From NCBI GenBank assembly GCA_028826165.1, contig JAPDFW010000061.1, positions 248,001 through 312,000 on the forward strand: a stretch of 64,000 nucleotides of DNA, read 5' to 3'. The DNA comes from Anaeramoeba ignava BMAN. Taxonomy: Eukaryota; Protista; Anaeramoebae. The stretch's first letter is position 1. The number at the start of each line of letters is the position of its first letter. Shown here piece by piece: positions 10,517-61,483 of this stretch. The translations under genes and the position numbers were made by a program. A model generated the notes under the pieces. That model searched no databases. It was not told where the DNA came from and saw only the letters and a list, made by a program, of their open reading frames with translations.

Positions 10517-13500
10517 ATGGATTTATTAATCAAACAACAAAAAACAAACAAAGCACTTGAAACAATAATAAAAAAACAGATCTATTCATTAGGAAGATAT
10601 TTTGGGACTTTAAACATACTAGATCGTGAAGGAAAAAAGCACAAAATTGGGTATACAAACGGGGACACACTTTACGAAGCAGCAAAAAAAGCAGGATTGA
10701 ATTCTGTTCTTGGTATTTGTGGAGGAAACATGAGTTGTGCAAGATGCCAAGTTTACATTGATGAAAAAGATCTTCCGCGCCTTCCTCCAATGTCACAACA
10801 AGAACAGGACGCATTGACTCATGCTTATAAACCTAATCCCCGCTCCCGTTTGGCTTGTGGTTTGGTTTTAGACACAAATACAAATGGATTGTCTATAGAT
10901 TTGGCTCCTTTGAAACCTAAAAAAATTCGCAAAAAAATCCAAAAACCTAAAGAGACTTCTATTACTATTACTGATTCTTCTGTTGTTTCTTATCCATTTT
11001 CTGAACCTTTTCTTTCGTTGAATCCTGATTCTTTGGAGACTGTGGAAAATTATCAAACTGTGAAAATTAAGGAAGGAATTCATTGGTGTGGTGTTATTGA
11101 TTGGGATTTGCGAGATTTTCATGGTAGGATTTATTAATATTTATTAAATATTATTGAATACTATTGAATTTTGAATATTATTAAATATTATTAAATATTG
11201 TTGAATATTATTGAATATTATTGAATACTATTGAATATTATTATTATTATTATTGAATATTATTGAATACTATTGGATATTATTGAATATTATTGAATAT
11301 TATTGAATATTATTGATTATTATTAAATATTTATTAAATATTTATTAAATATTATTAAATATTATTAAATATTATTAAATATTATTAAATATTATTGGAA
11401 TATTATTATTATTATTGAATATTATTGAATATTATTAAAATATTTAAATAAATTTATTAAATATTATTGAATATTATTGAATATTATTAAAATATTATTG
11501 AATATTATTAAATATTATTAAATATTATTATTAAATATTATTGAATATTATTGAATATTATTGAGTATTGAATATTATTGAATATCTCTATTAAATATTA
11601 TTAAATATTATTAAAAATATTTATTGAATATTGTTGAATTTTGAATATTATTAAATATTATTAAATATTAAATATTATTGAATATTATTGAATATTATTG
11701 AATATATTATTAAATATTATTGAATATTATTAAATATTATTAAATATTATTGAATATTATTAAATATTATTGAATATAATTATTGAATTTTGAATATTAT
11801 TAAATATTATTGAATATTATTGAATATTATTGAAATATTATTGAATATTTTGAATATTATTGAATATTTTTGAATATTATTAAATATTATTATTGATATT
11901 ATTTATTAAATATTATTGAATATTATTGAATAATATTATTGAATTATTAAATTAATATTAATTATTATTAGATATTATGATTATTATATTATTATTGAAT
12001 ATTGATTATTAAATATATTATTGATATTATTATTAAATATTATTGATTAATGATTATTAATTAATTATTATTATTAATTATTATTGAATATTATTAAATA
12101 TTATTAAATATTATTATTAAATATTATTAATTATTATATATTATTATTGAATATTATTGAATATTATTATTGAAATATTATTGAATATTATTGAATATTA
12201 TTGAATATTATTGAATATTTATTAAATATTATTAAATATTTATTAAATATTGTTAAATATTTATTAAATATTATTGAATATTATTGAAATATTGAATATT
12301 GTTAAAATATTTGTTAAATATTATTGAATATTATTAAATATTATTAAATATTATTGAATATTATTAAATATTATTGAATATTATTAAATATTATTGAATA
12401 TTATTAAATATTATTAAATATTATTGAATATTATTGAATATTATTAAATATTATTAAATATTATTGAATATTATTATTAAATATATTATTAAATATTATT
12501 AAATATTATTAAATATTATTGAATATTATTTAAATATTATTATTATTATTGAATATTATTAAATATTATTAAATATTTATTAAATATTTATTAAATATTA
12601 TTAAATATTATTAAATATTATTAAATATTATTAAATATTATTAAATATTATTAAATATTATTGAATATTATTAAATATTTATTGAATATTATTAAATATT
12701 ATTGAATATTATTGAATATTATTAAATATTATTAAATATTATTAAAATATTATTAAATATTATTATTAAATATTATTGAATATTATCAAATATTAAATAT
12801 TATTGAATATTATTAATTATTGTTAAATATTTATTGAATATTATTGAATATTATTAAATATTATTGAATATTATTAAATATTTATTAAATATTATTGAAT
12901 ATTATTGAATATTATTAAATATTTATTAAATATTATTGAATATTATTGAATATTATTAAATATTTTGGAATAAAAAAGGTTATCGAACAACAAGAGGAGG
13001 AACTTATAACTCCTATTTCATTCAAGACGAAGAAAGTGTATTAATTGATACAGTAAAACAACCATTTGTAGAACGCTATCTCAAAAAAGTCAAATCATTA
13101 GTAAATGGAGATCTGAAAAAAATCAAATATCTCGTTTGTCAACACGTGGAAATGGATCACAGTAGTGCATTACCGTCTGTCATGCAAGCATGCCCCCATC
13201 TTACAGTAGTTTGCACAGAATTATGCAAGCAAGTTCTCGAAAAACATTATGACATTTCCCAATGGAAATTTAAAATTGTGGCTGACGGAGAAACACTTAA
13301 ACTAGGAAAAAGAAGCTTGACATTCGTTGCAACGCCACTTGTTCATTGGCCCGAATCAATTGTCACTTATATGCCGGAAGAAAAAATACTTTTTTCAATG
13401 GACGCTTTTGGACAGCATTACGCAACAACTAAACGGTTTGATGATGAAGTTGATTTCTCAATTGTTCTTGATGAAATGAAGATCTACTACGCAAACATTT

Positions 13501-14117
13501 TAATGCGACTTTCAGTTCCGATCAAAAAGGCGTTAAAGAATCTAGGAACACTTGACATTTCGACGATCTGTCCAAGTCACGGAGTTGTTTTCCGGCAAAA
13601 AGAAAACATTTCCAAAATCATTGAAAAATACACAGACTGGGCAAATTTCAAGAAGAAACCTCACGTGATCTTATTCTACGACACAATGTACAAGTCAACA
13701 CAAAGAATGATCAACGAAGTAGCTGCCGGGATCAAAGAAGTGTCAGGTGTTACTTTTGACATTATGAACGTTCGCACAAATCACATCACAGACATAGCAA
13801 CTGGCGCATTGGACTGTGCAGCACTTGTTGTAGGAAGCCCAGTTTTCCAGGAACACTCAATGCCAGAAGTCATTTGCGCTCTATCTTACCTAGAAGCTCT
13901 TAGACCCCTTGACAAGCTTGCTTTGATCGTCAGTTCTTATGGTTGGAGTCAATCTGGTGCTGCTAATGATATCTCCCGTTATCTGGACTCCATAAAAGCA
14001 AAACAAATTAGAGATCCTATTTTTTCTTTTTATCGTCCTACTAATTCTCTTTTGAAAGAGTGCAGAGATGCCGGAAAACAATTGGCTTTGGAGGTTAAAA
14101 AAGTTTGCAATATTTAA
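10517..14117 (+). CDS. fprA: Flavodiiron protein with N-terminal adrenodoxin-type [2Fe-2S] ferredoxin and putative organellar presequence (581 aa)
   Basis: Exons 10517-11123 and 12979-14117 (phase-1 GT-AG intron). Ferredoxin motif C-x5-C-x2-C-x36-C (CGGNMSCARC...SRLAC). FDP motifs GIHWCGVIDWDLRDFHGY, GGTYNSY, HVEMDH, VHWPES, MDAFG, CPSHG, then flavodoxin (YDTMYKST, VGSP, SYGWS). Confidence 0.92.
11135..12965 (+). repeat. Intronic 10-mer repeat (ATATTATTGA/ATATTATTAA)n
   Basis: Fills the intron 11124-12978. Confidence 0.9.
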
Positions 14118-46011: not shown

Positions 46012-48095
46012 TTACCAATAACCAAAAAAACGATTAATTGCAGAACGTAATTCGCGAAGAGTTAAGAAAGAAATTAAAATTGAAGGAATATAAAAAGGAA
46101 TTAAACAAAAAGTAAAATGAACAAAAAAATGATGTAAAAAGAAGCAAATCAAAAGAAAGCCAAAACCACAAAAGACAAAAGTACTCAAAACAGTGAAAAC
46201 AAGATAACTGAAAGGAGGACGAGTGAAAAAAAGCATTCCAAAAGCAGTAAAAAGGGGAATCCAAAGGAAAATGAATATGAAAAAGTAATTCAAATGAATG
46301 ATTTGATCAGCTCGAAGAGAAATCAACAGAAAAAAAAGAAAAGAACTTGAAAAGGAGATCCAAGTTGAGTGTATTTCGGACCAACGGCGGTAATAAATAT
46401 TACGAAGTTGCGAGTAAAGAGCAAAAACCATAAAAACCAAAATTGCCAAATCAAGTGGGAAAAGCATTTTATACCATTTCCAATTGATAGTTCCGTTGGA
46501 TTTGAGAACAATGAAAAAAACCATCAAAACCAAGAATGCTACGACTGACCAAGCAATCATAATCCCAATGCGATCGCGGGGATTCATATATGCCAATATC
46601 GATATAATTATGAGGAATATGATCAAAATTAATAAAATTGGAGAAAATACGAAAAATGTACTTAATTTTCCTTTTTCAATGTGTATATTAGCAAGTAATA
46701 AGAAGAAGAAAATTATAATAGGAATGAAAATGGCAATGATCTCAAGCAAAGATTCAAATATTCTTGTCTTAGAATTGTATCTGTCGAAATTTCTATTTTG
46801 AGAATTTCTTTTTTGGATCATTGATTTTTTTTCAGTGAATTTTTTATATAATTTATTGGCTCTTGTAATGATCTCAGATCTTGGATCACTAACATGATTG
46901 ATATATTCGAGTCTTTCTGATTTTGTTGAGAGAGCAACTGGTAATAAACTCGCAGCTGAGCGAAAAGTTGATTTGTCTTCAACTAAGTTTGAATATTGAT
47001 TCTTTTCAAAATTAATTGTTTTTTTCAATTTGGAAATATTTCCGTTTTTGAGTAATTTGTTTCTTTCTTCGATATCGCTTTGATATCCTAATATTTGAAA
47101 ATCTCCAGAAAATGTGTATGTTTCAGCTAAATCAAGTTTGTCCCAAATGAAATAATCTTGGAATCTTGCTCCTATTTCTCTCCATAATAATTTATCTGAA
47201 AGTAAATCGTATATTGATTTGCTTGCAAAAGAGAAACGAATAGCCTCTCCTGGTGTGAGATATTCCATAATAAGAAGCAAGACTTTTAAATAAATTTTAT
47301 AAATAAATTAATAAATAATTTTTATAAATAAATTAATATTAAAATTTATAAATTTTAATATTAAAATTTATAAATAATTTTATATTAAAATTTGTATTAA
47401 AATTTTATAATAAAATTTATAAATAATTTTATAATAAAATTTATAATTAATATTATAAATAATTTATAAATAATTTTATAAATAATTTTATAATTTTATA
47501 AATAATTTTATATTAAAATTTATAATTAATTTTATATTTAATATTATAATTAATATTATAATTAATTTTATATTTAATATATATTTTATAAATAATTTTA
47601 TAATTTAATTTTATTTAATTTTATAATTTTATATTTAATTTTATATTTATTTTATATAATTTATTATAAATTAATTTTTATAATTAATTTTATAAATAAT
47701 TTTTATAAATAATTTTATAAATAATTTTATATTAAAATTTATAATAAATTTTATAAATAATTTTATATTAAAATTTATAAATAATTTTATATTTAATTTT
47801 ATAATAAATTTTATAAATAATTTTATATTAAAATTTATATTAAAATTTATAAATAATTTTATAAATAATTTTATAAATAATTTTATAAATAATTTTGCAG
47901 ACTTTCTGGTGGTAATTCTTCAATATTTAATTCATTTTGTTTAGGAGGTTTATTTAATAAAAAAGGTGGATGAAGAGATGAAGATTTTCTTAATCGTAGA
48001 AAATCAGAATCTTGAAGTACAACAACACCTTTGTTTTTATGAAGTACATATCTTCTAAGTTGTTGTTCTTTTTCTAATTCAGTTTTTTTATCCAT
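46012..48095 (-). CDS. F-box protein with C-terminal multipass TM region (TMEM185-like)
   Basis: Exons 48095-47903 and 47282-46012. The junction rebuilds the F-box IEELPPEILLLIMEYLTPGEAIRFSFASKSIYDL. About 7-8 TM helices with WKWYKMLFPL and FIFLWIP motifs. Confidence 0.75.
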
Positions 48096-48229: not shown

Positions 48230-51200
48230 AAATATCAAATATCAAATATCAAATATTGAATATTGAATTGAATATTAAATATTAAATTGAATTGAATTGA
48301 ATATTAAATATTGAATTGAATTGAATTGAATTGAATTAAATATTAAATTGAATATTGAATTAAATATTAAATATTAAATATTAAATATTGAATATTGAAT
48401 TAAATTGAATTGAATATTGAATTGAATTGAATTGAATTGAATATTGAATTGAATTGAATTGAATTGAATATTAAATATTGAATTAAATATTGAATTGAAT
48501 TAAATATTGAATATTGAATTAAATATTAAATATTAAAAATACTGAATTTAAAATGAATTGAATATTAAAATTGAATTAAATTAAATATTAAATATTGAAT
48601 ATTAATAAATATTAAATATTAAATATTGAATTTTTGAATAATTTTATATTAATTTAAATTAAAAATTGGAATGAATTGGAATTGGAATTGAAAGAATTGA
48701 ATTTTGAATTAAATTGAATTATAAATAATTTTTTGAATTGGAATCGAATTAAATATTAAATAATAAATTGAATTTTAAATATTTAATTTAAATAAATATT
48801 AAATATTAAATGAATATTTAATATTAAATTGAATAATTTAAATTAAATTTTTTAAATAATTTTAAATTGGAATTGAAATGGAATTGAATCAAATATTAAA
48901 TAATTAAATTTGAATTTTGAAATAGGTTTATTTAATGAATAAAAGGTCAAATATTGAAGAAATCAAAATTGAATTGAATTTGAATCGAAGAAAATCAGAA
49001 AATTGAATTGAATTTGAACAAAATATTTTATTGAATATTGAATTGAATATCTTGAATTTTAAATTAAATATTGAAATTGAATTTTTCGAATCCATAAAAT
49101 AAAAAGCAAAATATTGAATTGGAATTGAAAGGAAAAAAAGAATTAAATATTAAAAAAGAAAAATATTGAATTAAATTTGGAAATATTGGTGTTCGAGTAA
49201 ATATTAAATTTTGGAATTAAATTTAAATTGAATTGAATTGAATTGAATCAAATATTAAATATTAAAATATTGGAATATTAAATTAAATATTGAATACCGA
49301 ATATTGAATTGAATTGAAATTTGAATTGAATAAAATATTAAATTGAATGAATTGAATATTGAATTGAATTATTAAATATTGAATTAATTGAATTGAATTG
49401 AGGAAATTGGCAAATATTGGAAAGGAATGGATTGAAAAAAGAAATGAAATTGAATTGAAATTCGAATTGGAAATTGAATATTGAATGGAATCGAATTGAA
49501 TTAAATTGGAATTGAAATTGAATTGAATGAATTGAATAATTGAATTGAATATTGAAATTGAAATTGAAATTGGAATTGAATAAAATATATTGAAAAAAAT
49601 GAATTGAAATGAATATTAAAATTGAATTGATATTAAATATTGAATTGAATGGAATTGAATATTGAATTAAAGGCCAAATGAATTGAATTGAATTGAAATA
49701 TTGAATATGAATGAAATTGAAAATGAATTAAATATTGAATTGGGAATTGAAATATTGAATTGAATATTGAATGGAATTGAATTGATTGAATATTGAAATT
49801 AAATATTGAATTGAATTGAATTGAATATTGAATATTGAAAATTGAAATTGAATATTGAAATTGAATCGAATTGAATTGAATATTGAAATTGAATGAATTG
49901 AATATTGAATTCGAAATATTGAATGAATTGAATTAAATATTGAATTGAATTGAATTGAATATTGGTGAATATTGAATTATTGAATTAAATATTAAAATAT
50001 TGTGGTGAATATTGAATTAAATTGAATGAATATTGAATCGAATGACAAATATTAAATTGAATATTGAATAAAATTGAATTGAATATTGTCAAAATTAAAT
50101 ATTGAATACGAATGAAATTGAATATTAAATAAATGGAATATTATTGAATTGAATTGAATATTGAATGGAATTGAATGGAATGGGTGGGAATTGAATTGAA
50201 TATTGAAATTGAATATTGAATTGAATTGAATTGAATTAAATATTGAATATTAAATATTAAATATTGAATTGAATCGAATTAAATATTAAATATTAAATAT
50301 TAAATATTGAATTGAATTAAATATTAAATATTCGAATGGAATTAAAATATTAAATATTGAATTGGAATTGAATTAAATACCCCCGTGGAAATTGAATTAA
50401 ATATTGAATGAATTGAATATTAAAATTGAATATTGAATTGAATATTAAATTGAATATTTGGAATTGAATTGAATATTGAATTGAATTAAATATTGAATAT
50501 TAAAATTGAATTCAAATATTGAATATTGAATATTGGAATGAATATTAAAATGAATATTGAATCGAATTAAATATTGAATTAAATATTAAATATTGAATTG
50601 AATTGGAGAGCTCTATTGAATTGAATTGAATTAAATATTAAATAAATAAATTAAATATTAAATACTGAATTAAAATATTGAATATTAAATATTGAATATT
50701 GGGAATTAAATATTAAATATTAAATATTAAATATTGAATATGAATTGAATAAATATTGAATATTAAAACCAAATATTGAATATTAAATATTGAATCGAAA
50801 TATTGAATAATTAAATATTAAAATTGAAAAATTGAATTGAAATATTAAATATTAAATATTAAAATTGAAATTGAATATTAAAATTTGAATATTAAATTGA
50901 ATACGAATTGAAATTACCGAAATTGAATTGAAATTGAATTGAAATTGAAATGAATTGAATAAAAATATTGAATTGAATATTGAATTAAATTAAATATGAA
51001 AGTTGAATATTGAATTGAATTGAATATTGAATTGAATTGAATATTGAATATTGAATTGAATATTGAATTGAATATTAAATTAAATATTGAATTGAATTGA
51101 ATATTAAATATTGAATTAAATATTAAATTAAATTGAATTGAATTGAATTGAATATTGAATTGAATATTGAATTGAATTGAATTGAATATTGAATTGAATA

Positions 51201-51430
51201 TTGAATTAAATTAAATATTAAATATTAAATATTGAATATTGAATTGAATTGAATTGAATTGAATATTGAATTGAATTGAATTGAATTGAATATTGAATTA
51301 AATTGAATTAAATATTAAATTGAATTGAATTGAATTGAATTGAATTGAATATTGAATTAAATATTAAATATTAAATATTAAATATTAAAATTGAATTGAA
51401 TTGAATATTGAATTAAATATTGAATATTGA
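48230..51430. repeat. Intergenic (AATTG/AATATTG/AATATTA)n microsatellite
   Basis: 3.2 kb tract, regular at the edges and noisy in the centre. Confidence 0.9.
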
Positions 51431-51657
51431 AGTAATGAAAGAAGAGAGTTATTTTTTATTGTTGAAAAATAAATTAGAAAGGGGGATAAAAAATTTGCTT
51501 TGTTTTAAATTTAATAAAAAGAATTTAAATTAGATCTTTGAAAAGATCAATACTTTTAAATTAAAAAATTAAATTAAAATTTAAAAAAGAAAGAACGAAA
51601 AAAAAAATTTTGATTTCCAACAAATCATTTTTCTTTTCTGCAATAAATTATTTTAAA

Positions 51658-54600
51658 ATGGAAGCTGAAAAAGTAAAAGAGAATAAATTTTTTTATAAAC
51701 ACACAAAAAACACAATCTAAATCCAAAATAACCACACAATAAACATAAATAATAACCACACAATAAACATAAAATAACCACCAAATAAATTATTAAATTG
51801 ATTATTAAATTAATTATAAAATTGATTATTAAATTGATTATTAAATTAATTATAAAATTAATTATTAAATTGATTATTAAATTGATTATTAAATTGATTA
51901 TTAAATTGATTATTAAATTAATTATAAAATTAATTATTAAATTGATTATTAAATTGATTATTAAATTTATTATTAAATTAATTATTAAATTTATTATTAA
52001 ATTGATTATTAAATTGATTATTAAATTAATTATTAAATTAATTATTAAATTAATTATTAAATTGATTATTAAATTAATTAATAAATTAATTATTTATTAA
52101 ATTGATTATTAAATTGATTATAAAATTGATTATTAAATTGATTAATAAATTGATTATTAAATTAATTATTAAATTGATTAATAAATTTAATTATTAAATT
52201 GATTATTAAATTTATTATTAAATTAATTATTAAATTGATTAATAAATTTAATTATTAAATTGATTATTAAATTTATTATTAAATTTGATTATTAAATTGA
52301 TTATCAAATTGATTATTAAATTGATTATTAAAAAATTGATTATTAAATTGATTATTAAATTGATTATAAAATTTAATTATTAAATTGATTATTAAATTGA
52401 TTATTAAATTGATTATTAAATTAATTATAAAATTAATTATTAAATTAATTATTAAATTAATTATTAAATTAATTATTAAATTGATTATTAAATTAATTAT
52501 TAAATTTATTATTAAATTGGTTATTAAAATTAATTATAAAATTGATTATTAAATTGATTATAAAATTAATTATTAAATTGATTATAAAATTAATTATTAA
52601 ATTGATTATTAAATTTATTATTAAAATTAGTTACAAGCAGTTGAAATTCAGAAAAATTTTTATTGGGTTGGAGCTTTAGATCCTGATATAAGAATATTTG
52701 ATATTGTGATGTATTGTGAATTTGGAACAACATACAATTCATATTTATTAAAAGGAAGTGAAAAAACAGCACTTATTGAAACAGTAAAAGATACAAATGA
52801 TTCATACAGACAATTTGAAGAACGTTTGAATTCAATTTTGAAAAAAGGAGAAAAACTAGATTATGTTATTCATAATCATGCTGAACCAGATCATTCAGGT
52901 GCTTCTTATAGACTTCTTTCTGAAAAATTCCCTGAAGCAACTATTATAGCTTCAAGAAATGGTGTCGAGAATATTAAACATATGTATGGTGATGATGCTG
53001 AAAAATTCAGATTTTTGGAAGCTCGTGATGGTTTAATTGTTCGTCTTGGTGGTTTCACTCTTTCTTTTATGATGAATCCTTTAGGTTTGATAAATCAAAA
53101 TTTAAATCAAAATCAAAATCAAAATCAAAAATCAATATCAATATCAATATCAAAATTAAATTCAAATTCAATATCAAAATCAAATTCAAATTCAAATTTA
53201 AAATCAAAATCAAAATCAAAATCAAAATTAATATCAATATCAAAATTAAAATCAAAATTAAAATCAAAAATCAAAATCAATATCAAAATCAAAATTAAAA
53301 TTAAAATTAATATCAAAATCAAAATTAAAATTAAAATTAATATCAAAATCAAAATCAAAATTTAAATTAAATCAAAATCAAAATTTAAATTAAATCAAAA
53401 TCAAAATTTAAATTAAATCAAAATCAAAATTTAAATTAAATCAAAATCAAAATCAATATCAAAATCAAAATCAATATCAAAATTAAAATTAAATTCAAAA
53501 TCAATATCAAAATCATTTAGTTCATTGGCCAGATACAATGTTTACATATTGTCCTGAATTAAAAACTATATTTACTTGTGATCTTTTTGGTTCACATTAT
53601 TCTTCTCCAAAAATATTTAAAGATCTTCTTGATGAAAAAGAAACAGCAGATATGTGGAAAGCAGCAAAAGGATCATATTTTGATCCGATTTTTGGACCAT
53701 ATAAGAAATATGTAGTACAAGGATTAGATAAAATTAAAGAATTAGAACTTGAGATGATATGTTGTGCACATGGACCAGGTAAAAATAATTAAAAATCAAA
53801 ATCAAAATTAAAATCAAAATCAAAATTAAAATTAAAATCCAAATCAAAATTCAAAATCAATTTTAAAATCAAAATTAAAATTAAAATTAAAATTAAAATT
53901 AAAAATTAAAATTAAAATTAAAATTAAAATTAAAATTAAAATTAAAATTAAAATTAAAATCAAAATCAAAATCAAAATCAAAATTCAAATCAAAATCAAA
54001 ATCAAAATCAAAATCCAAATCAAAATCAAAATTCAAAATCAAAATCAAAATTAAAATAAAAATTCAAATCAAAATCCAAATCAAAATTCAAAATCAATTT
54101 TAAAATTAAAATTAAAATTAAAATTAAAATCAAAATCAAAATTAAATTCAAAATAAAAATCAAAAATAAAAAATATTTGAAAAAAAATAGTAATTAGAAA
54201 AAATATTGAAGAATACATGGAAAAATATCGAGAATGGAGCAAAATAACATTGCCAAAAAACAAAGTATTAATAGTTCATATAGCAGCTTATGGATTCACA
54301 AACCGTATGGCAACCCTTATCAAACAAGGATTGGAATCAATTGGCAAAGATATTGAAGTAAAGATGTTGAACTTCTTAGAAACAACAGAAACAGAAATAA
54401 TGAAGGAATTAGGAGAGTCACGAGGATTATTGCTTGGCTCACCAACACTTCTGAGCGATGCAGTACCACCAATTATGAAAATTGCAGCGAATTTAAACCC
54501 AGTTGTGCATGGAACGGATCCAGAAACGCGACTTGTTGCTTGCAGTTTCGGATCATACGGATGGAGTGGGGAAGCAGCTGACAATATCTGCCAACGACTC

Positions 54601-56928
54601 GCACAAGCAAGAGTAAGAATACCACTTCGGCCACTAAAAGTGCAATTGCGGCCCTCAAAAAAACAAGAGGAGCAATGTGTGGAATGGGGAGCGAAGTTCG
54701 GAAGATTGATGCTTGGATTGGATCCTGTGGATGAGGATCTTGAGAAGAAAATTCGGATCAAACAGACAAGTTTCCGAAAAGTTTTGAATCCAGAAATGGC
54801 GCAGAATATCGGACGCAAAACCTTCCGCGACGCGCAGGACGGGAAGATATACAAATGGCGGTGCATTGTTTGCGGGGAGATTGTGTATGCAACGATGCCA
54901 CCCGAGGTATGTCCTGCGTGCGGAGTGTCACAAGAAGTGTTTGTGATGGAAGACGAAGTCGAAAATTTTCCCGATGACTGGGAGCTAAGTGAGACTTTGC
55001 AAGGAGTAACCGACAAGATTGTTGTTATTGGAGCAAGTGCAGCAGGGGTGTCAGCGGTTCAGGCCATCAGGGAGCAAAACAAGAAAGCGCAGGTGACTTT
55101 AATCAGCGGAGAAAGCGCACCACCGTATTATCGACCCTCGTTAACCAAGTATCTTCTTGACGACAGACGGATCGAGGAAGAAGCGTTCCAGCTTGTGGAT
55201 CCGCAGTGGTTCGTTGAGAACAGTGTTGAGTTTTTATTGGGTACAGTTGTAACTAATATAAATATCAAAAAAAAGAGGATCGAACTTCAATCCAGAGAAA
55301 AAGGCGCAGGAAAGAAAAAACAGATCAGCTACGATCGACTCATTCTCGCTGTAGGAGCAAACCAGACACTTCCCAAAGAAAAAACATCCATTTTCCACAA
55401 GCGCGCGAAGACAGACATCTTGGGCGAAGCAACCTCAAAGAAGATAAATGTGTTTGCATTCCGCACGCTGGAAGACAGCAAGCGAATCAAAAGCTATATC
55501 CGCGCCAATAAGGTCAACTCCGCAATTGTGCTCGGTGCAGGTCCGCTTGGGCTCGAGGTGATGGAAGGTCTTCTCGGACTTGGCGTGAAGGAAATCAAGG
55601 CAATCGAAAGTCGCAAGCATATTTTGTCATCGAGATTGGATGATCAAGGAAGTTTGCTAGTTCAGAAGTTTCTTAAAAGACACGGTGTGAAATTTCATCT
55701 TGGCTACGAGATGCATCACATTTTGGATAACTCCAACAACAAGAAATACAAGAAAACAGAGAAAACTGCAAGTAATTTAGCTCATGGAATCGCTATACAG
55801 TCAATCGATATTGAAGACACTTCGCTCGTCGAAATTTATGCTGATATCGTCATTTTCGCCACTGGTGTTCATTCAGAGATGTCTCTTGCAAAGAAGATCG
55901 GACTCACCACTAAAAACGGGATTGTTGTTGATTCAAGAATGAAAACTTCCAATCCAGATATTTTTGCTTGTGGTGATTGCATTGAATACAAGGGTTTCAA
56001 TGAACGCTCTTGGCGCAATGCACAGGCATCTGGTCGTGTTGCAGGTCTTGCTGCTCTCGGCGATTCCGCTGTTACTTTCCGTGTCTCTGTTTCTCCTTAT
56101 GCTGTTGCCTTTGCTGGACTTAATATATTTTGCATAGGAAATATTCACGAACCAACTTTGGAATCTGTTTCTTTTGTTTCCCAGAAGATCCCTGCTTATA
56201 CCAGGCTTTTCTTTAGGGATGAAGGTTTCCGCTCAGTCATTTGTGGTGCTATGTTGATTACTACTGAGACTTCTATGATTGTGTCTATTGAGCAACATAT
56301 CCGAGCACAAACACCATTTAAAAAAGCGATTAAAAGTTTAATGTATTTTTTTAACTTAATATTAAAATATTAAAATTAAAATTAAAATTAAAATATTTAT
56401 ATTAATAATAATATAAAAAAGTGTTCATACATTTGCAAAAGATAAGAAAAAACAAGTCCTTTCTAAAAGAGCAAAAGCAAGAATCTCAAAAAGCAATATT
56501 CCAAATCTTTACACATTATTTCACTTCAAAGAAGGTTTCACTGCTTTCCATCGATTCCTTTGCGATGAATTTACAGAAGAAACTCTTGATTTCTGGGTAG
56601 ATGCAGAAAATTATGCTCAAATTCCAGATAACAACAAATCACAAGCTCCTTTAGCTAAACAAATTTTCCATGATTATCTCCGTTATGGTGCTGAAAAAGA
56701 AGTCAATATCGACCATTTTGCTCGTGTTGAATGCTCAGATCGAATCAAGAATAATGATATCGACAGAACTATCTTCTTAACAGCTCAAAGACAAATTGCA
56801 GAACTTCTTCAATCTGATCTTCTTAAACGTTTCTTAAGAAGTCCTGAAGCAAAACCTGTTATTGAGAAATTTGGAAATTTACAAGACAAAATTGAAAAAA
56901 ATTCAGAAGATGAATCAACAAGTAGTGA

Positions 56929-56932
<4 letters not shown>
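51658..56932 (+). CDS. Class F-like flavodiiron protein (diiron MBL + flavodoxin + short rubredoxin + NADH:rubredoxin oxidoreductase) fused to a C-terminal RGS domain (about 1129 aa)
   Basis: Exons 51658-51672, 52631-53084, 53521-53778, 54191-56342, 56422-56932, all GT-AG and phase-compatible. Motifs HAEPDH, VHWPD, CDLFG, CAHG; GSPT, GSYGWSGEA; CIVC-x12-CPAC; GASAAG, GAGPLG, IFACGD; then RGS. Confidence 0.85.
51795..52625 (+). repeat. Intronic 12-mer repeat (AAATTGATTATT)n
   Basis: Fills intron 51673-52630. Confidence 0.85.
56422..56932 (+). CDS. RGS (regulator of G-protein signalling) domain exon, not in the ORF track
   Basis: Open frame with no ATG: EGFTAFHRFLCDEFTEETLDFWVDAENY...AKQIFHDYLRYGAEKEVNID...IFLTAQRQIAELLQSDLLKRFLRS...TSSD*. 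Confidence 0.9.
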
Positions 56933-57058: not shown

Positions 57059-60000
57059 TTATTTTTGTGAATTTATAAAATTGGAATTAATAAAATAATG
57101 ACTATTTGTAATTCCTGTATCTGCAAAATTACTCAAATCTGTTTGTAAATTTTGATTTAAAACATTTCCATTTCGTTCTTGATTTTGTGAATTGATTGAA
57201 TTCTGATTAAAATACGAAGATTGGTTTTGATTTGAATTTTGATTTTGTTTCAAATATTGATTTGAATCTGATAAAGTTCTTCCATCAATATCTTCAGACC
57301 TAATCTTATTTTTTTTAGAGCGAACAGTACGCAAATCCTTCTTGATAAGAAAAATCTTTTTTTTGCCATTGAGAACATCTTGACTTTTTGGTCCAAGTAG
57401 GAAATTAATTGTAACACACTTTGAAGAAGAAGATCTTGTTGAGAAAAGCGAGAATTCTTCTTTGAGAATTTTCTTCACAACCAAAAGTTGAAACAAAGTA
57501 TTCAAATAGGCTTGTGAAAGAGAAACGGGAGAATTATTGGAATCTTTGCGTTTGTTTGTATTAAGAAGTCTAACAAGTTGCTTTTTGTTTTTGTTTTGGT
57601 GCTCTTTGATGGTATTTATAACATGTATAGAATCATCAGTAACATCTTTTAAGGGAAATTCATTTTCTTGTGATTCTCGACAAAAATCACAAGAAGAATG
57701 GCATTGTGAACTGGGGAATTTCTCTTTGAAATATTTGAGTAAAGCAACTCGTCTGCACTTGTGATTCTGTTCGCAATAATTCGCCATTGATTCTAAAAGA
57801 TGAAGTTGATGAGTTTTCATGTATTCGCTATGAAGTGAGTTTTGAGCAGATTCTTCATCATTCGAAAGTATGGCTTTAGCAATGCGGATTTTATCTGCAG
57901 AAGAGTAATAAATTCTACAACAAGCAGGCTTTCCATCACGACCAGCACGACCACTTTCCTGATAATATCCCTCAAGACACTTGGGAATTGTCTGATGAAT
58001 AACAAATCTCACATCTGATTTATTGATCCCCATCCCAAAAGCGATTGTTGCTATCACAACCTTGATTTCTCCATTCAGCCAGCGCTGTTGTGTGTCATCA
58101 CGTTCACTATCATCACGATGATAAATACCGCAACGTATCCCACTTTTCTGCATTTCACTTGCTAAACGGTTGCAATCTCCCTTCGAAAAACAGTACACAA
58201 TCCCGGTTTGATTGGGATATACTGATTTGATAAACTTTATAATTTGCGTGTTCACTTTCTTTGTTTTTGGAACAACTTCGTAGATCAAATTCGGGCGATT
58301 GAAACTCTGAATGAAAATTTCGCATCCATTAATTCCGAGAATTTGAACCACATCCTTCATCACTGTTGGTGTTGCTGTGGCTGTTAATGCAATTATAGGC
58401 ACACCACTAAATCTTCTTTTTAATTCTTGAAGATCTTTGTAACTTGGTCGGAAATCATGTCCCCACTGAGAAACGCAATGTGCTTCATCAATTGCAAATC
58501 TTTGGAGTTTATTTTCTTGGTTCAGTCTTGTTAACAAGGAAAAAAATCTGCGACTTGAATTTATTTTCTCAGGTGTCACATAAAGAATTTTAATTACTTC
58601 ATCTGACCTTTCAAGTGATTGGTAAATATGTTCTTCATCCCCAGTATTAAAACTCTCAGCTGGAATACCTACAGATTTCAAATACATGACTTGATCACGA
58701 ATCAGAGAGATTAATGGCGATACCACTACTGTTACTCCTTTGTTTACTAGTGATGGTAATTGATAACACAATGAGTTGTGTGTTACTGTGAAATCTTCAA
58801 GCAAGTATCTTTGTGTTCCATCAAGTTCAAATCCATAATATTCTGCTTCTTCTATCGGATATACCTGGAATTTTCTGAGTGAATAATGTGTTCCTGGTTT
58901 GAGTCCTGTTTGTTTTCTGTTGTTGATGTAATTTTGCGGGAATTCTGCAACCCATATTTTATGCATTTTTCCATTATGCTTTCTCCTTTCATGTTTTTGC
59001 ATTTTTTCATTTAGTTTTTCAATTTCTTCTTCATCTATATATATCTTTCTTATCCTAATCTCAATTCCAATACATCTTCCTATAAATTGCACATCTTTCC
59101 TCCACTTAGAACCACTAAAATTTCCTCTACTTAAAATTATCCTATCAGGAAATTTTGAATCTTCCCATATTTCTATACTTCCCTCAATAATTCCCCATAA
59201 AAACTCCATTTGTTGTTTTTGTGTTGCATATTTATAAACACTGGGAATTCTTCTTATTTTTGTGTTAAATTCATTTTTGCAATTAATTCGAAATAACATT
59301 TTCCCTGCTTTGTAAGGGGATATTTTCATTGGTTTTGATTTTATTCCTTCAAATGAAACTTGCACTTTAAAAAGTCTTATTCTTTCCTTAATTTGTAAAG
59401 GTAAATTCATAAGATTTTGTGCTTCAATATCAAAAACACAACCTGTTTTCTGATCAACAACACTAATCAAATGAGCAGATGTAACATCAAAATACTCTCC
59501 AGTTTCAGCAACAACCCGATACATTTGATCTTTTCCAGAACACAAAGCAATAACATTTCGTGGTTTAGAATCTTCCCCCATTAATTTATCACCAACTCTC
59601 ACTTTTTCTACACATTTCATCTTTCCATTGATAAGCATAACTTTTGTTCCTTTTGGATGACACTTACCTCCACCTGTTGGCATTATCACGAAAATATCCT
59701 TTCCTAGCATCGATGCATTTATGATTTCTTGTTGATGCGTTCGAAATTTACTGATCCCAAAAAGTGGCATTGTTTTTTGTATTTCAGAACTCCAAGAAAA
59801 TGTTTTTTGTCGATATTGGTCATAATCTGTGTTTACTTTCATTTTTTCCTTTTCATCGGACATTAAAAATTGGAAGTGGCTTTTCATTTCTTCTTCGGTC
59901 ATGATTTTGGGTTGTGAATGGAATACATTTACTGGTTCATATTCAGTAAAATCAAGTTCTTGTTTTGGTCTATCAAATTCTTGAAAATTCTGATTATTTG

Positions 60001-61483
60001 TAAAGCTTTGTCTTGGTTTCTCTGTAAAATCGTTATTGAAATCATTATCATATAAATCATCAAATGTTCCAATATTGGGTGTATTTTTTGAAAAAATGAT
60101 ATTTGCATTGCTTGTTTCATCTCCAAAACTTGTAATTTTTGAAGTGGAAATATTTGAGTATAATTGCTGTCTTAAATCTTTTTTATTTTCATATGTTGGA
60201 GTTTTTTCTATTTCTGTAAAATTTGGAGTATTTTTCGAAATTGTAAATAAATTATTTGCTGAAACAAATCCATTATTAAGATTATTTGAAAGATTATTTG
60301 AAAAATTATTTAAATTATTTGAAAGATTATTTGAAAGATTATTTGAAAGATTATTTGAAATATTATTTAAATTATTTAAATTAGTTGAAAAGTAATTTGA
60401 ATTATTTGAATTATTTGAATTATTTGAATTATTTGAATTATTAGAAAAGTTATTTGAATTATTTGAATTATTTGAATTATTAGAAAAGTAATTTGAAAAG
60501 TTATTTGAATTATTTGAATTATTTGAAGTATTTGAATTATTTGAGTTATTTGAATTATTTGGATTATTTGAATTATTTGAATTATTTGAATTATTTGAAT
60601 TATTTGAATTATTTGAATTATTTGAATTATTTGAATTATGATTTAGAATTCCTCTCTTTAATTTTGATTCCATAATTTGACTCATTTCATTAACTTGATT
60701 TCCAATAAGAGAGATTATATGAGCAAATTCTTGAATTTTTCTTGATAATTCTTCTAGATTCATTTCCTCCATTTCTACATGTGATAAAAAACTAATATTT
60801 TCTAATTGATTTCTATAATGGTTTGCATATATTATTTGAACTGGTTTTTTTATTATTTGGTTTTGAATTTTATACAAAGAATTTTCTTGAAAGCTATTAT
60901 TTTTTGTAAATGAATTTGAATTTGAATTTGAATTTGAATTTGTATTTGAATTTGAATTTGTATTTGAATTTGTATTTGAATTTGTATTTGAATTTGTATT
61001 TGAATTTGAATTTGGATTTGGATTTGAATTTAAATTAGAATTTGAATTCTGGATTTTTATCTGGGAATTTGATTGAAATATTATAGGTGTTTTATTTGGT
61101 GAATTTAATAAAGAAGGATTATTGAAATTTGATAAATTTTGTTGCTGTTTTTGTTGTTTTGTTGATTTTGGTGAATTTAATAAATTATTTGATGAATTTT
61201 GCATTGTTTTTGGTAATAAATTTGTTGATAATGGATTCACTGTAGTTGGAAGTGCTCCTTGAAATGCTTTTAATTTATCAAAAATATTTACATTATTTTT
61301 ATTTTTGATTGGATTTGATAAAAATTGAGAGTTTGTAATTCCTTCAAAATTATTATTTCCTTTATCATTTATAAATGAATTTGAATTTGAATTTGAATTT
61401 GAATTTTTGTTTGTTTTTGGTTTTTTAACTTGAAAACCAGAACTTAAATCAACATTTGCAAAATAATCTACTTTTTGACTCAT
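57059..61483 (-). CDS. recQ: RecQ-family (BLM/Sgs1-like) DNA helicase precursor containing an intein
   Basis: FGISKFRTHQQEII, MPTGGGK|SLCYQLP, VSPLISLIRDQV, AIDEAHCVSQWGHDFRPSY, ALTATA, ATIAFGMGINK, YYQESGRAGRDG, RQC zinc site CRR...CHSSCDFC. N-rich N-terminus; intronless. Confidence 0.95.
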   Translation of the reverse strand: MSQKVDYFANVDLSSGFQVKKPKTNKNSNSNSNSNSFINDKGNNNFEGITNSQFLSNPIKNKNNVNIFDKLKAFQGALPTTVNPLSTNLLPKTMQNSSNNLLNSPKSTKQQKQQQNLSNFNNPSLLNSPNKTPIIFQSNSQIKIQNSNSNLNSNPNPNSNSNTNSNTNSNTNSNTNSNSNTNSNSNSNSNSFTKNNSFQENSLYKIQNQIIKKPVQIIYANHYRNQLENISFLSHVEMEEMNLEELSRKIQEFAHIISLIGNQVNEMSQIMESKLKRGILNHNSNNSNNSNNSNNSNNSNNSNNSNNPNNSNNSNNSNTSNNSNNSNNFSNYFSNNSNNSNNSNNFSNNSNNSNNSNNSNNSNYFSTNLNNLNNISNNLSNNLSNNLSNNLNNFSNNLSNNLNNGFVSANNLFTISKNTPNFTEIEKTPTYENKKDLRQQLYSNISTSKITSFGDETSNANIIFSKNTPNIGTFDDLYDNDFNNDFTEKPRQSFTNNQNFQEFDRPKQELDFTEYEPVNVFHSQPKIMTEEEMKSHFQFLMSDEKEKMKVNTDYDQYRQKTFSWSSEIQKTMPLFGISKFRTHQQEIINASMLGKDIFVIMPTGGGKCHPKGTKVMLINGKMKCVEKVRVGDKLMGEDSKPRNVIALCSGKDQMYRVVAETGEYFDVTSAHLISVVDQKTGCVFDIEAQNLMNLPLQIKERIRLFKVQVSFEGIKSKPMKISPYKAGKMLFRINCKNEFNTKIRRIPSVYKYATQKQQMEFLWGIIEGSIEIWEDSKFPDRIILSRGNFSGSKWRKDVQFIGRCIGIEIRIRKIYIDEEEIEKLNEKMQKHERRKHNGKMHKIWVAEFPQNYINNRKQTGLKPGTHYSLRKFQVYPIEEAEYYGFELDGTQRYLLEDFTVTHNSLCYQLPSLVNKGVTVVVSPLISLIRDQVMYLKSVGIPAESFNTGDEEHIYQSLERSDEVIKILYVTPEKINSSRRFFSLLTRLNQENKLQRFAIDEAHCVSQWGHDFRPSYKDLQELKRRFSGVPIIALTATATPTVMKDVVQILGINGCEIFIQSFNRPNLIYEVVPKTKKVNTQIIKFIKSVYPNQTGIVYCFSKGDCNRLASEMQKSGIRCGIYHRDDSERDDTQQRWLNGEIKVVIATIAFGMGINKSDVRFVIHQTIPKCLEGYYQESGRAGRDGKPACCRIYYSSADKIRIAKAILSNDEESAQNSLHSEYMKTHQLHLLESMANYCEQNHKCRRVALLKYFKEKFPSSQCHSSCDFCRESQENEFPLKDVTDDSIHVINTIKEHQNKNKKQLVRLLNTNKRKDSNNSPVSLSQAYLNTLFQLLVVKKILKEEFSLFSTRSSSSKCVTINFLLGPKSQDVLNGKKKIFLIKKDLRTVRSKKNKIRSEDIDGRTLSDSNQYLKQNQNSNQNQSSYFNQNSINSQNQERNGNVLNQNLQTDLSNFADTGITNSHYFINSNFINSQK
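58775..59662 (-). mobile_element. Intein (296 aa) in RecQ motif I, with degenerate LAGLIDADG-type endonuclease region
   Basis: Starts CHPKGTKVML, block B VTSAH, ends YYGFELDGTQRYLLEDFTVTHN followed by Ser+1. Removal restores PTGGGKSLCYQLP. Confidence 0.95.

What the first reader, a model, noticed from the sequence alone, without database searches (positions are those of the whole stretch)
51658..56932. Flavodiiron O2/NO reductase chain fused to an RGS domain: candidate redox-responsive G-protein regulator
Seen: the apparent FDP end (…KSLMYFFNLILKY*) is AT-rich, intron-like sequence. A GT at 56343 and an AG at 56420-21 define a 79-nt phase-2 intron (AT|T = Ile) joining the NROR domain in frame to a 511-nt exon with no ATG of its own. 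That exon encodes a clear RGS fold. Known: class F FDPs carry MBL-diiron, flavodoxin, short rubredoxin and NADH:rubredoxin oxidoreductase and act as self-sufficient NADH:O2 (or NO) reductases; RGS domains are GAPs for G-alpha subunits. I know of no FDP class with an RGS domain. Inference: a bacterial-type detoxification enzyme joined to a eukaryotic signalling module, possibly linking O2/NO or NADH status to G-protein signalling (e.g. aerotaxis in an anaerobic amoeba). No presequence is present, consistent with a cytosolic location.
Basis: partly seen in the sequence, partly recalled or inferred. Interest (0 to 1): 0.95.

Follow-up and report, generated by a model that had tools for sequence, protein, structure and literature searches.

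The report
Oxygen-scavenging enzyme fused to G-protein brake
An anaerobic amoeba makes a single protein that joins a complete oxygen-removing enzyme chain to a domain that switches off G proteins, a combination I found nowhere else and that could let the cell link oxygen or redox state directly to signalling.

Summary
The fusion is real. Five exons give an open 1129-aa frame: diiron, flavodoxin, short rubredoxin, NADH:rubredoxin oxidoreductase (NROR), RGS. A public run holds one intron-free 3,406-nt contig spliced exactly at 56342/56422. The protein is already deposited (Anaeramoeba ignava KAJ5076370.1) under a generic flavoprotein name. The fusion is conserved: two paralogues in A. ignava and four in A. 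flamelloides, where NROR and RGS share one exon. The four copies placed in a tree form one clade, and between A. flamelloides paralogues the RGS has dN/dS of 0.07-0.09. No such fusion appeared outside Anaeramoeba or in the papers searched. All diiron and rubredoxin ligands are intact, with O2-type Lys58/Tyr276. Caveat: this copy has Thr at the RGS4 Asn88 contact; the other five keep Asn. The genome has about 43-45 G-alpha and about 50 RGS loci, and three GPCR family searches found nothing. Coupling of redox state to GAP activity is inferred, not shown. Passive tethering or enzyme targeting remain open, and aerotaxis has no evidence. The scan noted a class F FDP elsewhere in this genome; none of the 8 notes shown mention this fusion.

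The parts
51658..51672 (+). exon 1 (start codon, 5 codons)
   Evidence: identical to NCBI model P0001; same intron position and phase in paralogue P0002; not covered by the read-laying
52631..53084 (+). exon 2: MBL diiron domain, first part (ligands H88, E90, D92, H93; K58)
53521..53778 (+). exon 3: MBL diiron domain, second part (ligands H158, D177, H240)
54191..56342 (+). exon 4: flavodoxin, short rubredoxin and NROR domains
54259..54717 (+). flavodoxin (FMN) domain, about aa 266-418; Y276, T279, T328 and W367 kept; S274 is Ala
54856..54942 (+). short rubredoxin, C467/C470-x12-C483/C486
55012..56337 (+). NADH:rubredoxin oxidoreductase (FAD) domain, about aa 517-958
   Evidence: (best PDB match 3KLJ, E 2.6e-27)
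56343..56421 (+). intron 4: 79 nt, GT-AG, phase 2, removed in the transcript; reading into it gives the apparent stop at 56371-56373
   Evidence: same position and phase in paralogue P0002; absent in four A. flamelloides homologues
56422..56932 (+). exon 5: basic helical linker, RGS domain, acidic tail, stop
56516..56845 (+). RGS domain (aa 992-1101); RGS4-equivalent E87, N128, L159, D163 and R167 kept; N88 is Thr, S85 is Thr, S164 is Leu

Best explanation
An Anaeramoeba-specific subfamily of class F flavodiiron proteins (FDPs) that gained a C-terminal canonical RGS domain once, before A. ignava and A. flamelloides split, and then duplicated in each. Shown: the fusion, its transcription as one mRNA, its conservation and the intact cofactor ligands. 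Inferred from the class F family: the enzyme part runs NADH > FAD > Fe(Cys)4 > FMN > diiron and reduces O2 to water as a head-to-tail dimer. Inferred from the RGS family: the tail is a GAP for some of the roughly 45 G-alpha subunits. Inferred and untested: the redox state of the chain (reduced in anoxia, oxidised when O2 enters or NADH falls) sets the access of the RGS to membrane-bound G-alpha, by docking and release of the tethered domain or by exposing basic segments. The protein would then be a receptor-independent O2/redox input to a G-protein system controlled at the hydrolysis step.
For: Spliced transcript. Six fused genes in two species; in the four A. flamelloides genes NROR and RGS lie in one exon. 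The fused copies form one clade, SH-aLRT 100. RGS identity between species (0.41) is like that of the enzyme domains (0.42-0.51). RGS dN/dS is 0.07-0.09 between A. flamelloides paralogues. All seven diiron ligands and four Cys are invariant. K58 and Y276 align with the Lys and Tyr engineered into E. coli flavorubredoxin at 52 and 262 in PDB entries; that these mark O2 preference is my own knowledge. Unfused class F FDPs persist in the same genomes (P0005, P0124, P0007), so plain detoxification is already covered. The genome has about 43-45 G-alpha loci, mostly with the RGS-sensitive switch I T-T-G and catalytic Gln, and about 50 RGS loci. Three GPCR families and G-gamma gave no match. In Trichomonas, G-alpha is self-activating and is proposed to be controlled by GAPs or GDIs (PMC3865004). 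Fungal RGS-LOV shows a flavin sensor-RGS fusion switching membrane binding through a polybasic helix (PMC6099885). A basic stretch follows the last NROR helix in all six fused copies.
Against: No direct evidence of coupling. The AlphaFold model of NROR+RGS has pTM 0.74, pLDDT under 50 at the end of the linker (model residues 466-474), and the linker carries a low-complexity insert of about 35 aa in two A. flamelloides copies; this suggests a flexible tether. In TvFDPF3 the Rb and NROR domains are mobile (PMC9364112). The window copy has Thr for Asn88, one of three critical G-alpha contacts (PMC8252600); 57 of 58 other RGS domains have Asn. The GPCR searches had no positive control and are weak on divergent, intron-split genes; the genome paper's supplement assigns one A. 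ignava gene to an adhesion-GPCR family. Basic composition may reflect AT-rich codon bias. Self-activation of Anaeramoeba G-alpha is unmeasured.
Confidence: 0.42

Rival explanations
1. Information flows the other way: the RGS domain is a targeting or effector module that recruits the O2-scavenging enzyme to activated G-alpha on a membrane (for example the cell front, a phagosome or the symbiosome), giving local O2 removal or switching the oxidase on.
For: A canonical RGS acts as the G-alpha-binding part of a putative effector in Naegleria RGS-RhoGEF (PMC9283941). The enzyme motifs are all intact. The tether looks flexible. Loss of Asn88 in the window copy would fit binding with weak GAP activity. 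The symbionts express oxygen-defence genes highly (PMC11550330).
Against: RGS domains bind the transition state, not stably the GTP form (PMC9283941), which suits a GAP better than an anchor. Five of six copies keep every GAP contact. There are no localisation data.
Confidence: 0.25
2. Two independent activities on one chain: a constitutive oxidase and a constitutive GAP, fused during the RGS expansion of this lineage and kept for co-expression or co-location, with no allosteric link.
For: About 50 RGS loci in the genome, and RGS appears in several unrelated fusions according to unchecked scan notes. The linker is variable.
Against: The fusion is retained in all six copies across about 40% sequence identity, and no member of the fused clade has lost the RGS. 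The fused clade has its own invariant residues and an insert in the NROR domain (17 positions), suggesting an altered role.
Confidence: 0.2
3. The redox chain has become a slow sensor rather than an efficient oxidase (O2, NO or NADH/NAD+ read-out), comparable to ODP di-iron sensors.
For: Clade-specific changes near the pyridine nucleotide site (G692 to A/S/C, V694P, Q724R, R/K803 lost, N805E). Y276, invariant in 116 unfused relatives, is His in the four A. flamelloides copies. The window copy has S274A in the FMN loop.
Against: The whole electron chain is kept under purifying selection (dN/dS 0.05-0.20). P694, E805 and A274 each occur in a few unfused relatives.
Confidence: 0.11
4. Artefact: two adjacent genes or a misassembly joined by a false intron.
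For: Only one run supports the transcript, and it is not on record as RNA.
Against: A spliced contig crosses the exact junction. The same intron is present in a paralogue on another contig. An uninterrupted NROR-RGS exon is found in four genes from two A. flamelloides assemblies.
Confidence: 0.01

Closest known systems
Class F flavodiiron proteins (C. difficile CD1623, PMC6033852; T. vaginalis TvFDPF1-3, PMC9364112; H. meleagridis HmFDPF, PMC12528894)
   Same: Four-domain order, seven diiron ligands, short rubredoxin with 12-residue spacing, NROR domain with an intact second GxGxxG motif.
   Different: Extra C-terminal RGS domain; basic inserts; remodelled residues near the NADH site. It falls in a clade with other Anaeramoeba, Mastigella and Eutreptiella-labelled sequences, apart from the trichomonad enzymes. 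In the papers read, the extra domains named for FDP classes B-H serve electron transfer; none is a signalling domain.
Canonical RGS proteins (RGS4, 1AGR) and protist 7TM-RGS or RGS-RhoGEF (PMC3865004, PMC9283941)
   Same: RGS box with N128, D163, E87 and R167; best PDB match RGS4, E 1.7e-17; G-alpha subunits with RGS-sensitive switch I in the same genome.
   Different: The partner is a soluble metalloflavoenzyme, not a membrane receptor or a GEF. The window copy has N88T and S164L.
Fungal RGS-LOV photoreceptors (BcLOV4, PMC6099885)
   Same: A flavin-containing sensor fused to an RGS domain, with polybasic linker helices.
   Different: Light sensor, RGS at the N-terminus, no enzyme chain, no homology outside the RGS.
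ODP oxygen-binding di-iron sensors of bacterial signalling (own knowledge; Pfam PF19583 hit)
   Same: An FDP-derived MBL diiron domain linked to signalling.
   Different: ODPs lack the flavodoxin, rubredoxin and reductase domains and bind rather than reduce O2. Here the full chain is kept and the output is eukaryotic.

Membership tests
Class F FDP | MBL-diiron, flavodoxin, short rubredoxin and NROR in one chain, in that order | tested here: met
   definition from PMC6033852
Class F FDP | Diiron ligands H-x-E-x-D-H, H, D, H | tested here: met
   H88, E90, D92, H93, H158, D177 and H240 invariant; aligned to 1YCF and E. coli FlRd
Class F FDP | Two CxxC motifs 12 residues apart | tested here: met
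   C467/C470 and C483/C486
Class F FDP | Second (NADH) GxGxxG motif strictly conserved | tested here: met
   G691, G693, G696; acidic E715 kept
Class F FDP | First (FAD) GxGxxG motif and FMN phosphate loop | tested here: inconclusive
   The middle Gly is Ser525 (also in unfused P0009); the motif is known to vary. S274A in the FMN loop is shared with 4 of 116 unfused relatives. Cofactor binding not measured.
Class F FDP | Self-sufficient NADH:O2 reductase activity and head-to-tail dimer | not testable with these tools
   needs purified protein
Canonical RGS GAP | RGS box sequence and all-helical fold | tested here: met
   Pfam 76 bits against cut-off 23.9; helical domain at pLDDT 92-97
Canonical RGS GAP | Asn128 and Asp163 contacts | tested here: met
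   N1055 and D1092, kept in all six fused copies
Canonical RGS GAP | Asn88 contact to G-alpha Thr182 | tested here: not met
   T1014 in the window copy, confirmed by the transcript contig (no difference in exon 5); Asn in the other five fused copies and in 57 of 58 other RGS domains; importance from PMC8252600 and PMC10794492
Canonical RGS GAP | Accelerates GTP hydrolysis by a G-alpha | not testable with these tools
   needs a biochemical assay
7TM-RGS | Transmembrane receptor-like domain before the RGS | tested here: not met
   everything upstream of the RGS is assigned to soluble enzyme domains
ODP di-iron sensors | MBL-diiron domain without flavodoxin or reductase chain | tested here: not met
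   flavodoxin, rubredoxin and NROR are present; the ODP model scores below its cut-off per exon

The most novel reading that the evidence does not exclude
A soluble, receptor-independent oxygen/redox sensor for heterotrimeric G proteins: a self-contained NADH-to-O2 electron chain whose oxidation state gates an attached GAP, in an anaerobic amoeba that houses oxygen-sensitive symbionts. This would be a new FDP class with a signalling output and a new mode of eukaryotic O2 sensing.
Probability: 0.4. Interest if true: 0.9.

Novelty: new variant of a known kind. Interest (0 to 1): 0.76.

Why it matters
Flavodiiron proteins are known as detoxifying terminal oxidases, and the extra domains described for them serve electron transfer. 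A conserved, expressed FDP-RGS fusion is the first FDP with a eukaryotic signalling domain that I could find. How anaerobic protists sense oxygen, and what regulates G-alpha in lineages poor in GPCRs, are both open questions. This protein makes them testable with one recombinant protein and standard NADH oxidase and GAP assays.

Tried and rejected
Artefact or two-gene reading: rejected. Exon shuffling at intron 4 as the origin of the fusion: undecided, because the intron sits at the domain boundary in both A. ignava copies but is absent in all four A. flamelloides copies, so gain or loss cannot be polarised. Wider distribution: a profile of the NROR C-terminus plus RGS against 1.84 billion representatives returned only Anaeramoeba proteins spanning both parts, and none of the other 147 listed hits had FDP or NROR sequence; this covers the top 150 only. 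An RGS-region word search was too insensitive to be informative (63 candidates). The ESM Atlas gave only reductase C-terminal clusters below 0.9. Literature: no paper held flavodiiron + RGS + G-protein signaling; the Anaeramoeba genome paper and its held supplements do not mention the fusion (some files were cut); the A. pumila preprint mentions only Fd-FDP. A switch to NADPH was considered and not supported (E715 and G696 kept). The transcript-derived A. flamelloides fragment P0122 stops before the junction, so it is uninformative. GPCR and G-gamma searches were blank but had no positive control. One Pfam call, one paper search (23) and one script (67) failed on my input errors and were rerun.
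Full report
Observation. Five exons (51658-51672, 52631-53084, 53521-53778, 54191-56342, 56422-56932) with GT-AG introns of 958, 436, 412 and 79 nt (4-12% GC) give an open frame of 1129 codons, and the last exon has no in-frame Met. Searched exon by exon, Pfam finds ODP/Lactamase_B in exons 2-3, flavodoxin, short rubredoxin and Pyr_redox_2 in exon 4, and RGS (E 3e-21) in exon 5.

The junction is real. The only public run holding this stretch contains one 3,406-nt contig that lies on exons 2 to 5 with consecutive record coordinates, including 56342 to 56422. Its two differences from the window are synonymous. The run's type is not on record; lacking three introns, with no second near-identical locus found in the assembly, it is most simply a spliced transcript. 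A rare unspliced form cannot be seen in contigs. Independently, the paralogue on contig C115 has all four introns at the same codon and phase, and four A. flamelloides homologues encode NROR and RGS inside one uninterrupted exon.

Identity and distribution. Exon 4 retrieves a 1129-aa NCBI record from Anaeramoeba ignava (P0001, KAJ5076370.1, named only 'diflavin flavoprotein a 2-related'), identical to the model. RGS-bearing homologues are P0002 (A. ignava) and P0003, P0004, P0130 and P0131 (A. flamelloides, each with near-identical records in two accession series, i.e. two assemblies). None of the other 116 listed class F hits carries PF00615. Unfused class F genes remain in both species (P0005, P0124, P0007; P0006). 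In a 66-sequence tree of the enzyme part, the four fused proteins tested form one clade (SH-aLRT 100), split by species. It lies within a group of unfused Anaeramoeba, Mastigella and Eutreptiella-labelled sequences and apart from the trichomonad enzymes (quick tree, no bootstrap, midpoint root, some long branches; P0130 and P0131 not included, 78-83% identical to P0004 and P0003). The simplest reading is one fusion before the two species split, then separate duplications. A profile of the NROR C-terminus plus RGS against 1.84 billion representatives gave only these proteins spanning both parts.

The enzyme part looks intact. The seven diiron ligands and four rubredoxin cysteines are invariant and match the class F definition (PMC6033852). 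K58 and Y276 align with the Lys52 and Tyr262 variants of E. coli flavorubredoxin in the PDB; from my own knowledge these positions mark O2-preferring enzymes. The NROR's best PDB match is Clostridium NROR 3KLJ; the second GxGxxG motif and acidic E715 suggest NADH. The fused clade has 17 invariant residues that are rare in unfused relatives, several near the nucleotide site, plus a basic insert around aa 639-660. The A. flamelloides copies have His at the otherwise invariant Y276.

The RGS part is under selection but this copy is odd. RGS identity between species (0.41) matches that of the enzyme domains. dN/dS between A. flamelloides paralogues is 0.07 and 0.09 for RGS and 0.05-0.20 for the enzyme domains (Nei-Gojobori, dS near 1, not computed for the window gene). 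Against RGS4 the window copy keeps E83, E87, N128, L159, D163 and R167 but has T for S85, T for N88 and L for S164. The other five fused copies keep N88, as do 57 of 58 other RGS domains. N88 is one of three critical contacts (PMC8252600), and the E87A/N88A double mutant loses GAP activity (cited in PMC10794492). This copy may be a weak GAP or have changed partner; a few G-alpha genes here have Ile, Val, Arg or Ser at the Thr182 position, which is only a lead.

Context. The genome has about 43-45 G-alpha loci, most with switch I T-T-G and the catalytic Gln, and about 50 RGS loci (lower bounds from exon-wise matches). Dicty_CAR, 7tm_2, 7tm_3 and G-gamma gave no match, without a positive control. 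Trichomonas G-alpha is self-activating and proposed to be controlled by GAPs or GDIs (PMC3865004). Naegleria has self-activating G-alpha with 7TM-RGS partners (PMC9283941). If Anaeramoeba is similar, signals enter through RGS proteins, and an RGS tied to an O2-reducing chain is a natural O2/redox input.

Mechanism. An AlphaFold model of NROR plus RGS (mean pLDDT 89, pTM 0.74) shows the last NROR helix continuing for 31 residues across the splice site, then a low-confidence stretch, then a well-formed RGS. With the variable linker in A. flamelloides, this argues against a rigid lever and for a tether. I put redox-gated GAP access at 0.42, G-alpha-dependent targeting of the oxidase at 0.25, uncoupled activities at 0.20, a slow-sensor variant at 0.11 and artefact at 0.01. 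Fungal RGS-LOV (PMC6099885) is the nearest working analogy; a basic stretch follows the NROR in all six copies, though AT-rich codon bias could contribute. Aerotaxis has no evidence.

Novelty. It is a class F FDP by every sequence feature that could be decided, with an added signalling domain not mentioned in the papers searched (the library lacks most subscription journals). The domains are already visible in database annotation but apparently undiscussed. I rate it a new variant of a known kind, with a real chance of being a new sensing mechanism.

The window gene was searched exon by exon by window reference. My own joined model was built only inside scripts from the window file and was never sent to a search tool; that joined step was left out. 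Several later calls (17, 22, 28 with 30/40, 48 with 52/65 and 66/69, 49, 73, 77) used the deposited record P0001, returned, by its id, and these stretches cross splice junctions; P0001 was also looked up whole by id. A reader who counts these as the joined step can set them aside. That the fusion is real, transcribed and conserved rests. The wider-distribution screen, the diiron-site alignments and the structural model do depend on the P0001 calls.

Noticed in passing
window 57059-61483 (-): RecQ helicase ORF (1474 aa) with a Hint (intein) insert interrupting the helicase just after the Walker A start; it ends 127 nt from the FDP-RGS stop, convergent. Inteins are known to be abundant in Anaeramoeba (PMC10710043, abstract seen).
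   Followed up: partly
window 10517-14117 (+): A second FDP gene in the window: N-terminal 2Fe-2S ferredoxin (Fer2 E 6e-4, just under cut-off) joined to an FDP core; resembles the Fd-FDP named in the A. pumila preprint.
   Followed up: partly
P0009 / P0129 (ENA metagenome; EukProt record labelled Eutreptiella): A class F FDP with an N-terminal extension containing Dpy-30/RIIa-like docking motifs (Pfam Dpy-30 E 1.5e-4, just under cut-off) and a C-terminal extension; it lies in the same tree group as the Anaeramoeba enzymes. Possibly a second, independent recruitment of a class F FDP to a eukaryotic scaffold.
   Followed up: partly
G000:C46:270574-271260 (L051) and G000:C74:189402-190694 (L052): G-alpha genes with Ser in place of the switch I Gly (RGS-insensitive type) and a changed Thr182 position; three other loci (L055, L066, L068) have Ile or Ser at Thr182.
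   Followed up: partly
G000:C64:276226-282665 (L044): Two intronless, tandem, near-identical unfused class F FDP genes (P0005, P0124).
   Followed up: partly
intron in the codon before the HWPD motif (window 53085-53520; L041, L042, L043, L047, L048): The intron is phase 1 in both A. ignava genes and phase 2 in all four A. flamelloides genes at the same codon: an apparent one-base intron slide.
   Followed up: partly
window 46012-47280 (-): F-box-like N-terminus joined to a multi-pass membrane domain (422 aa).
   Followed up: no
window 51000-54190 introns and intergenic DNA: Introns and spacers are built of degenerate 6-12 nt AT-rich tandem repeats with strong strand-specific G or C skew.
   Followed up: no
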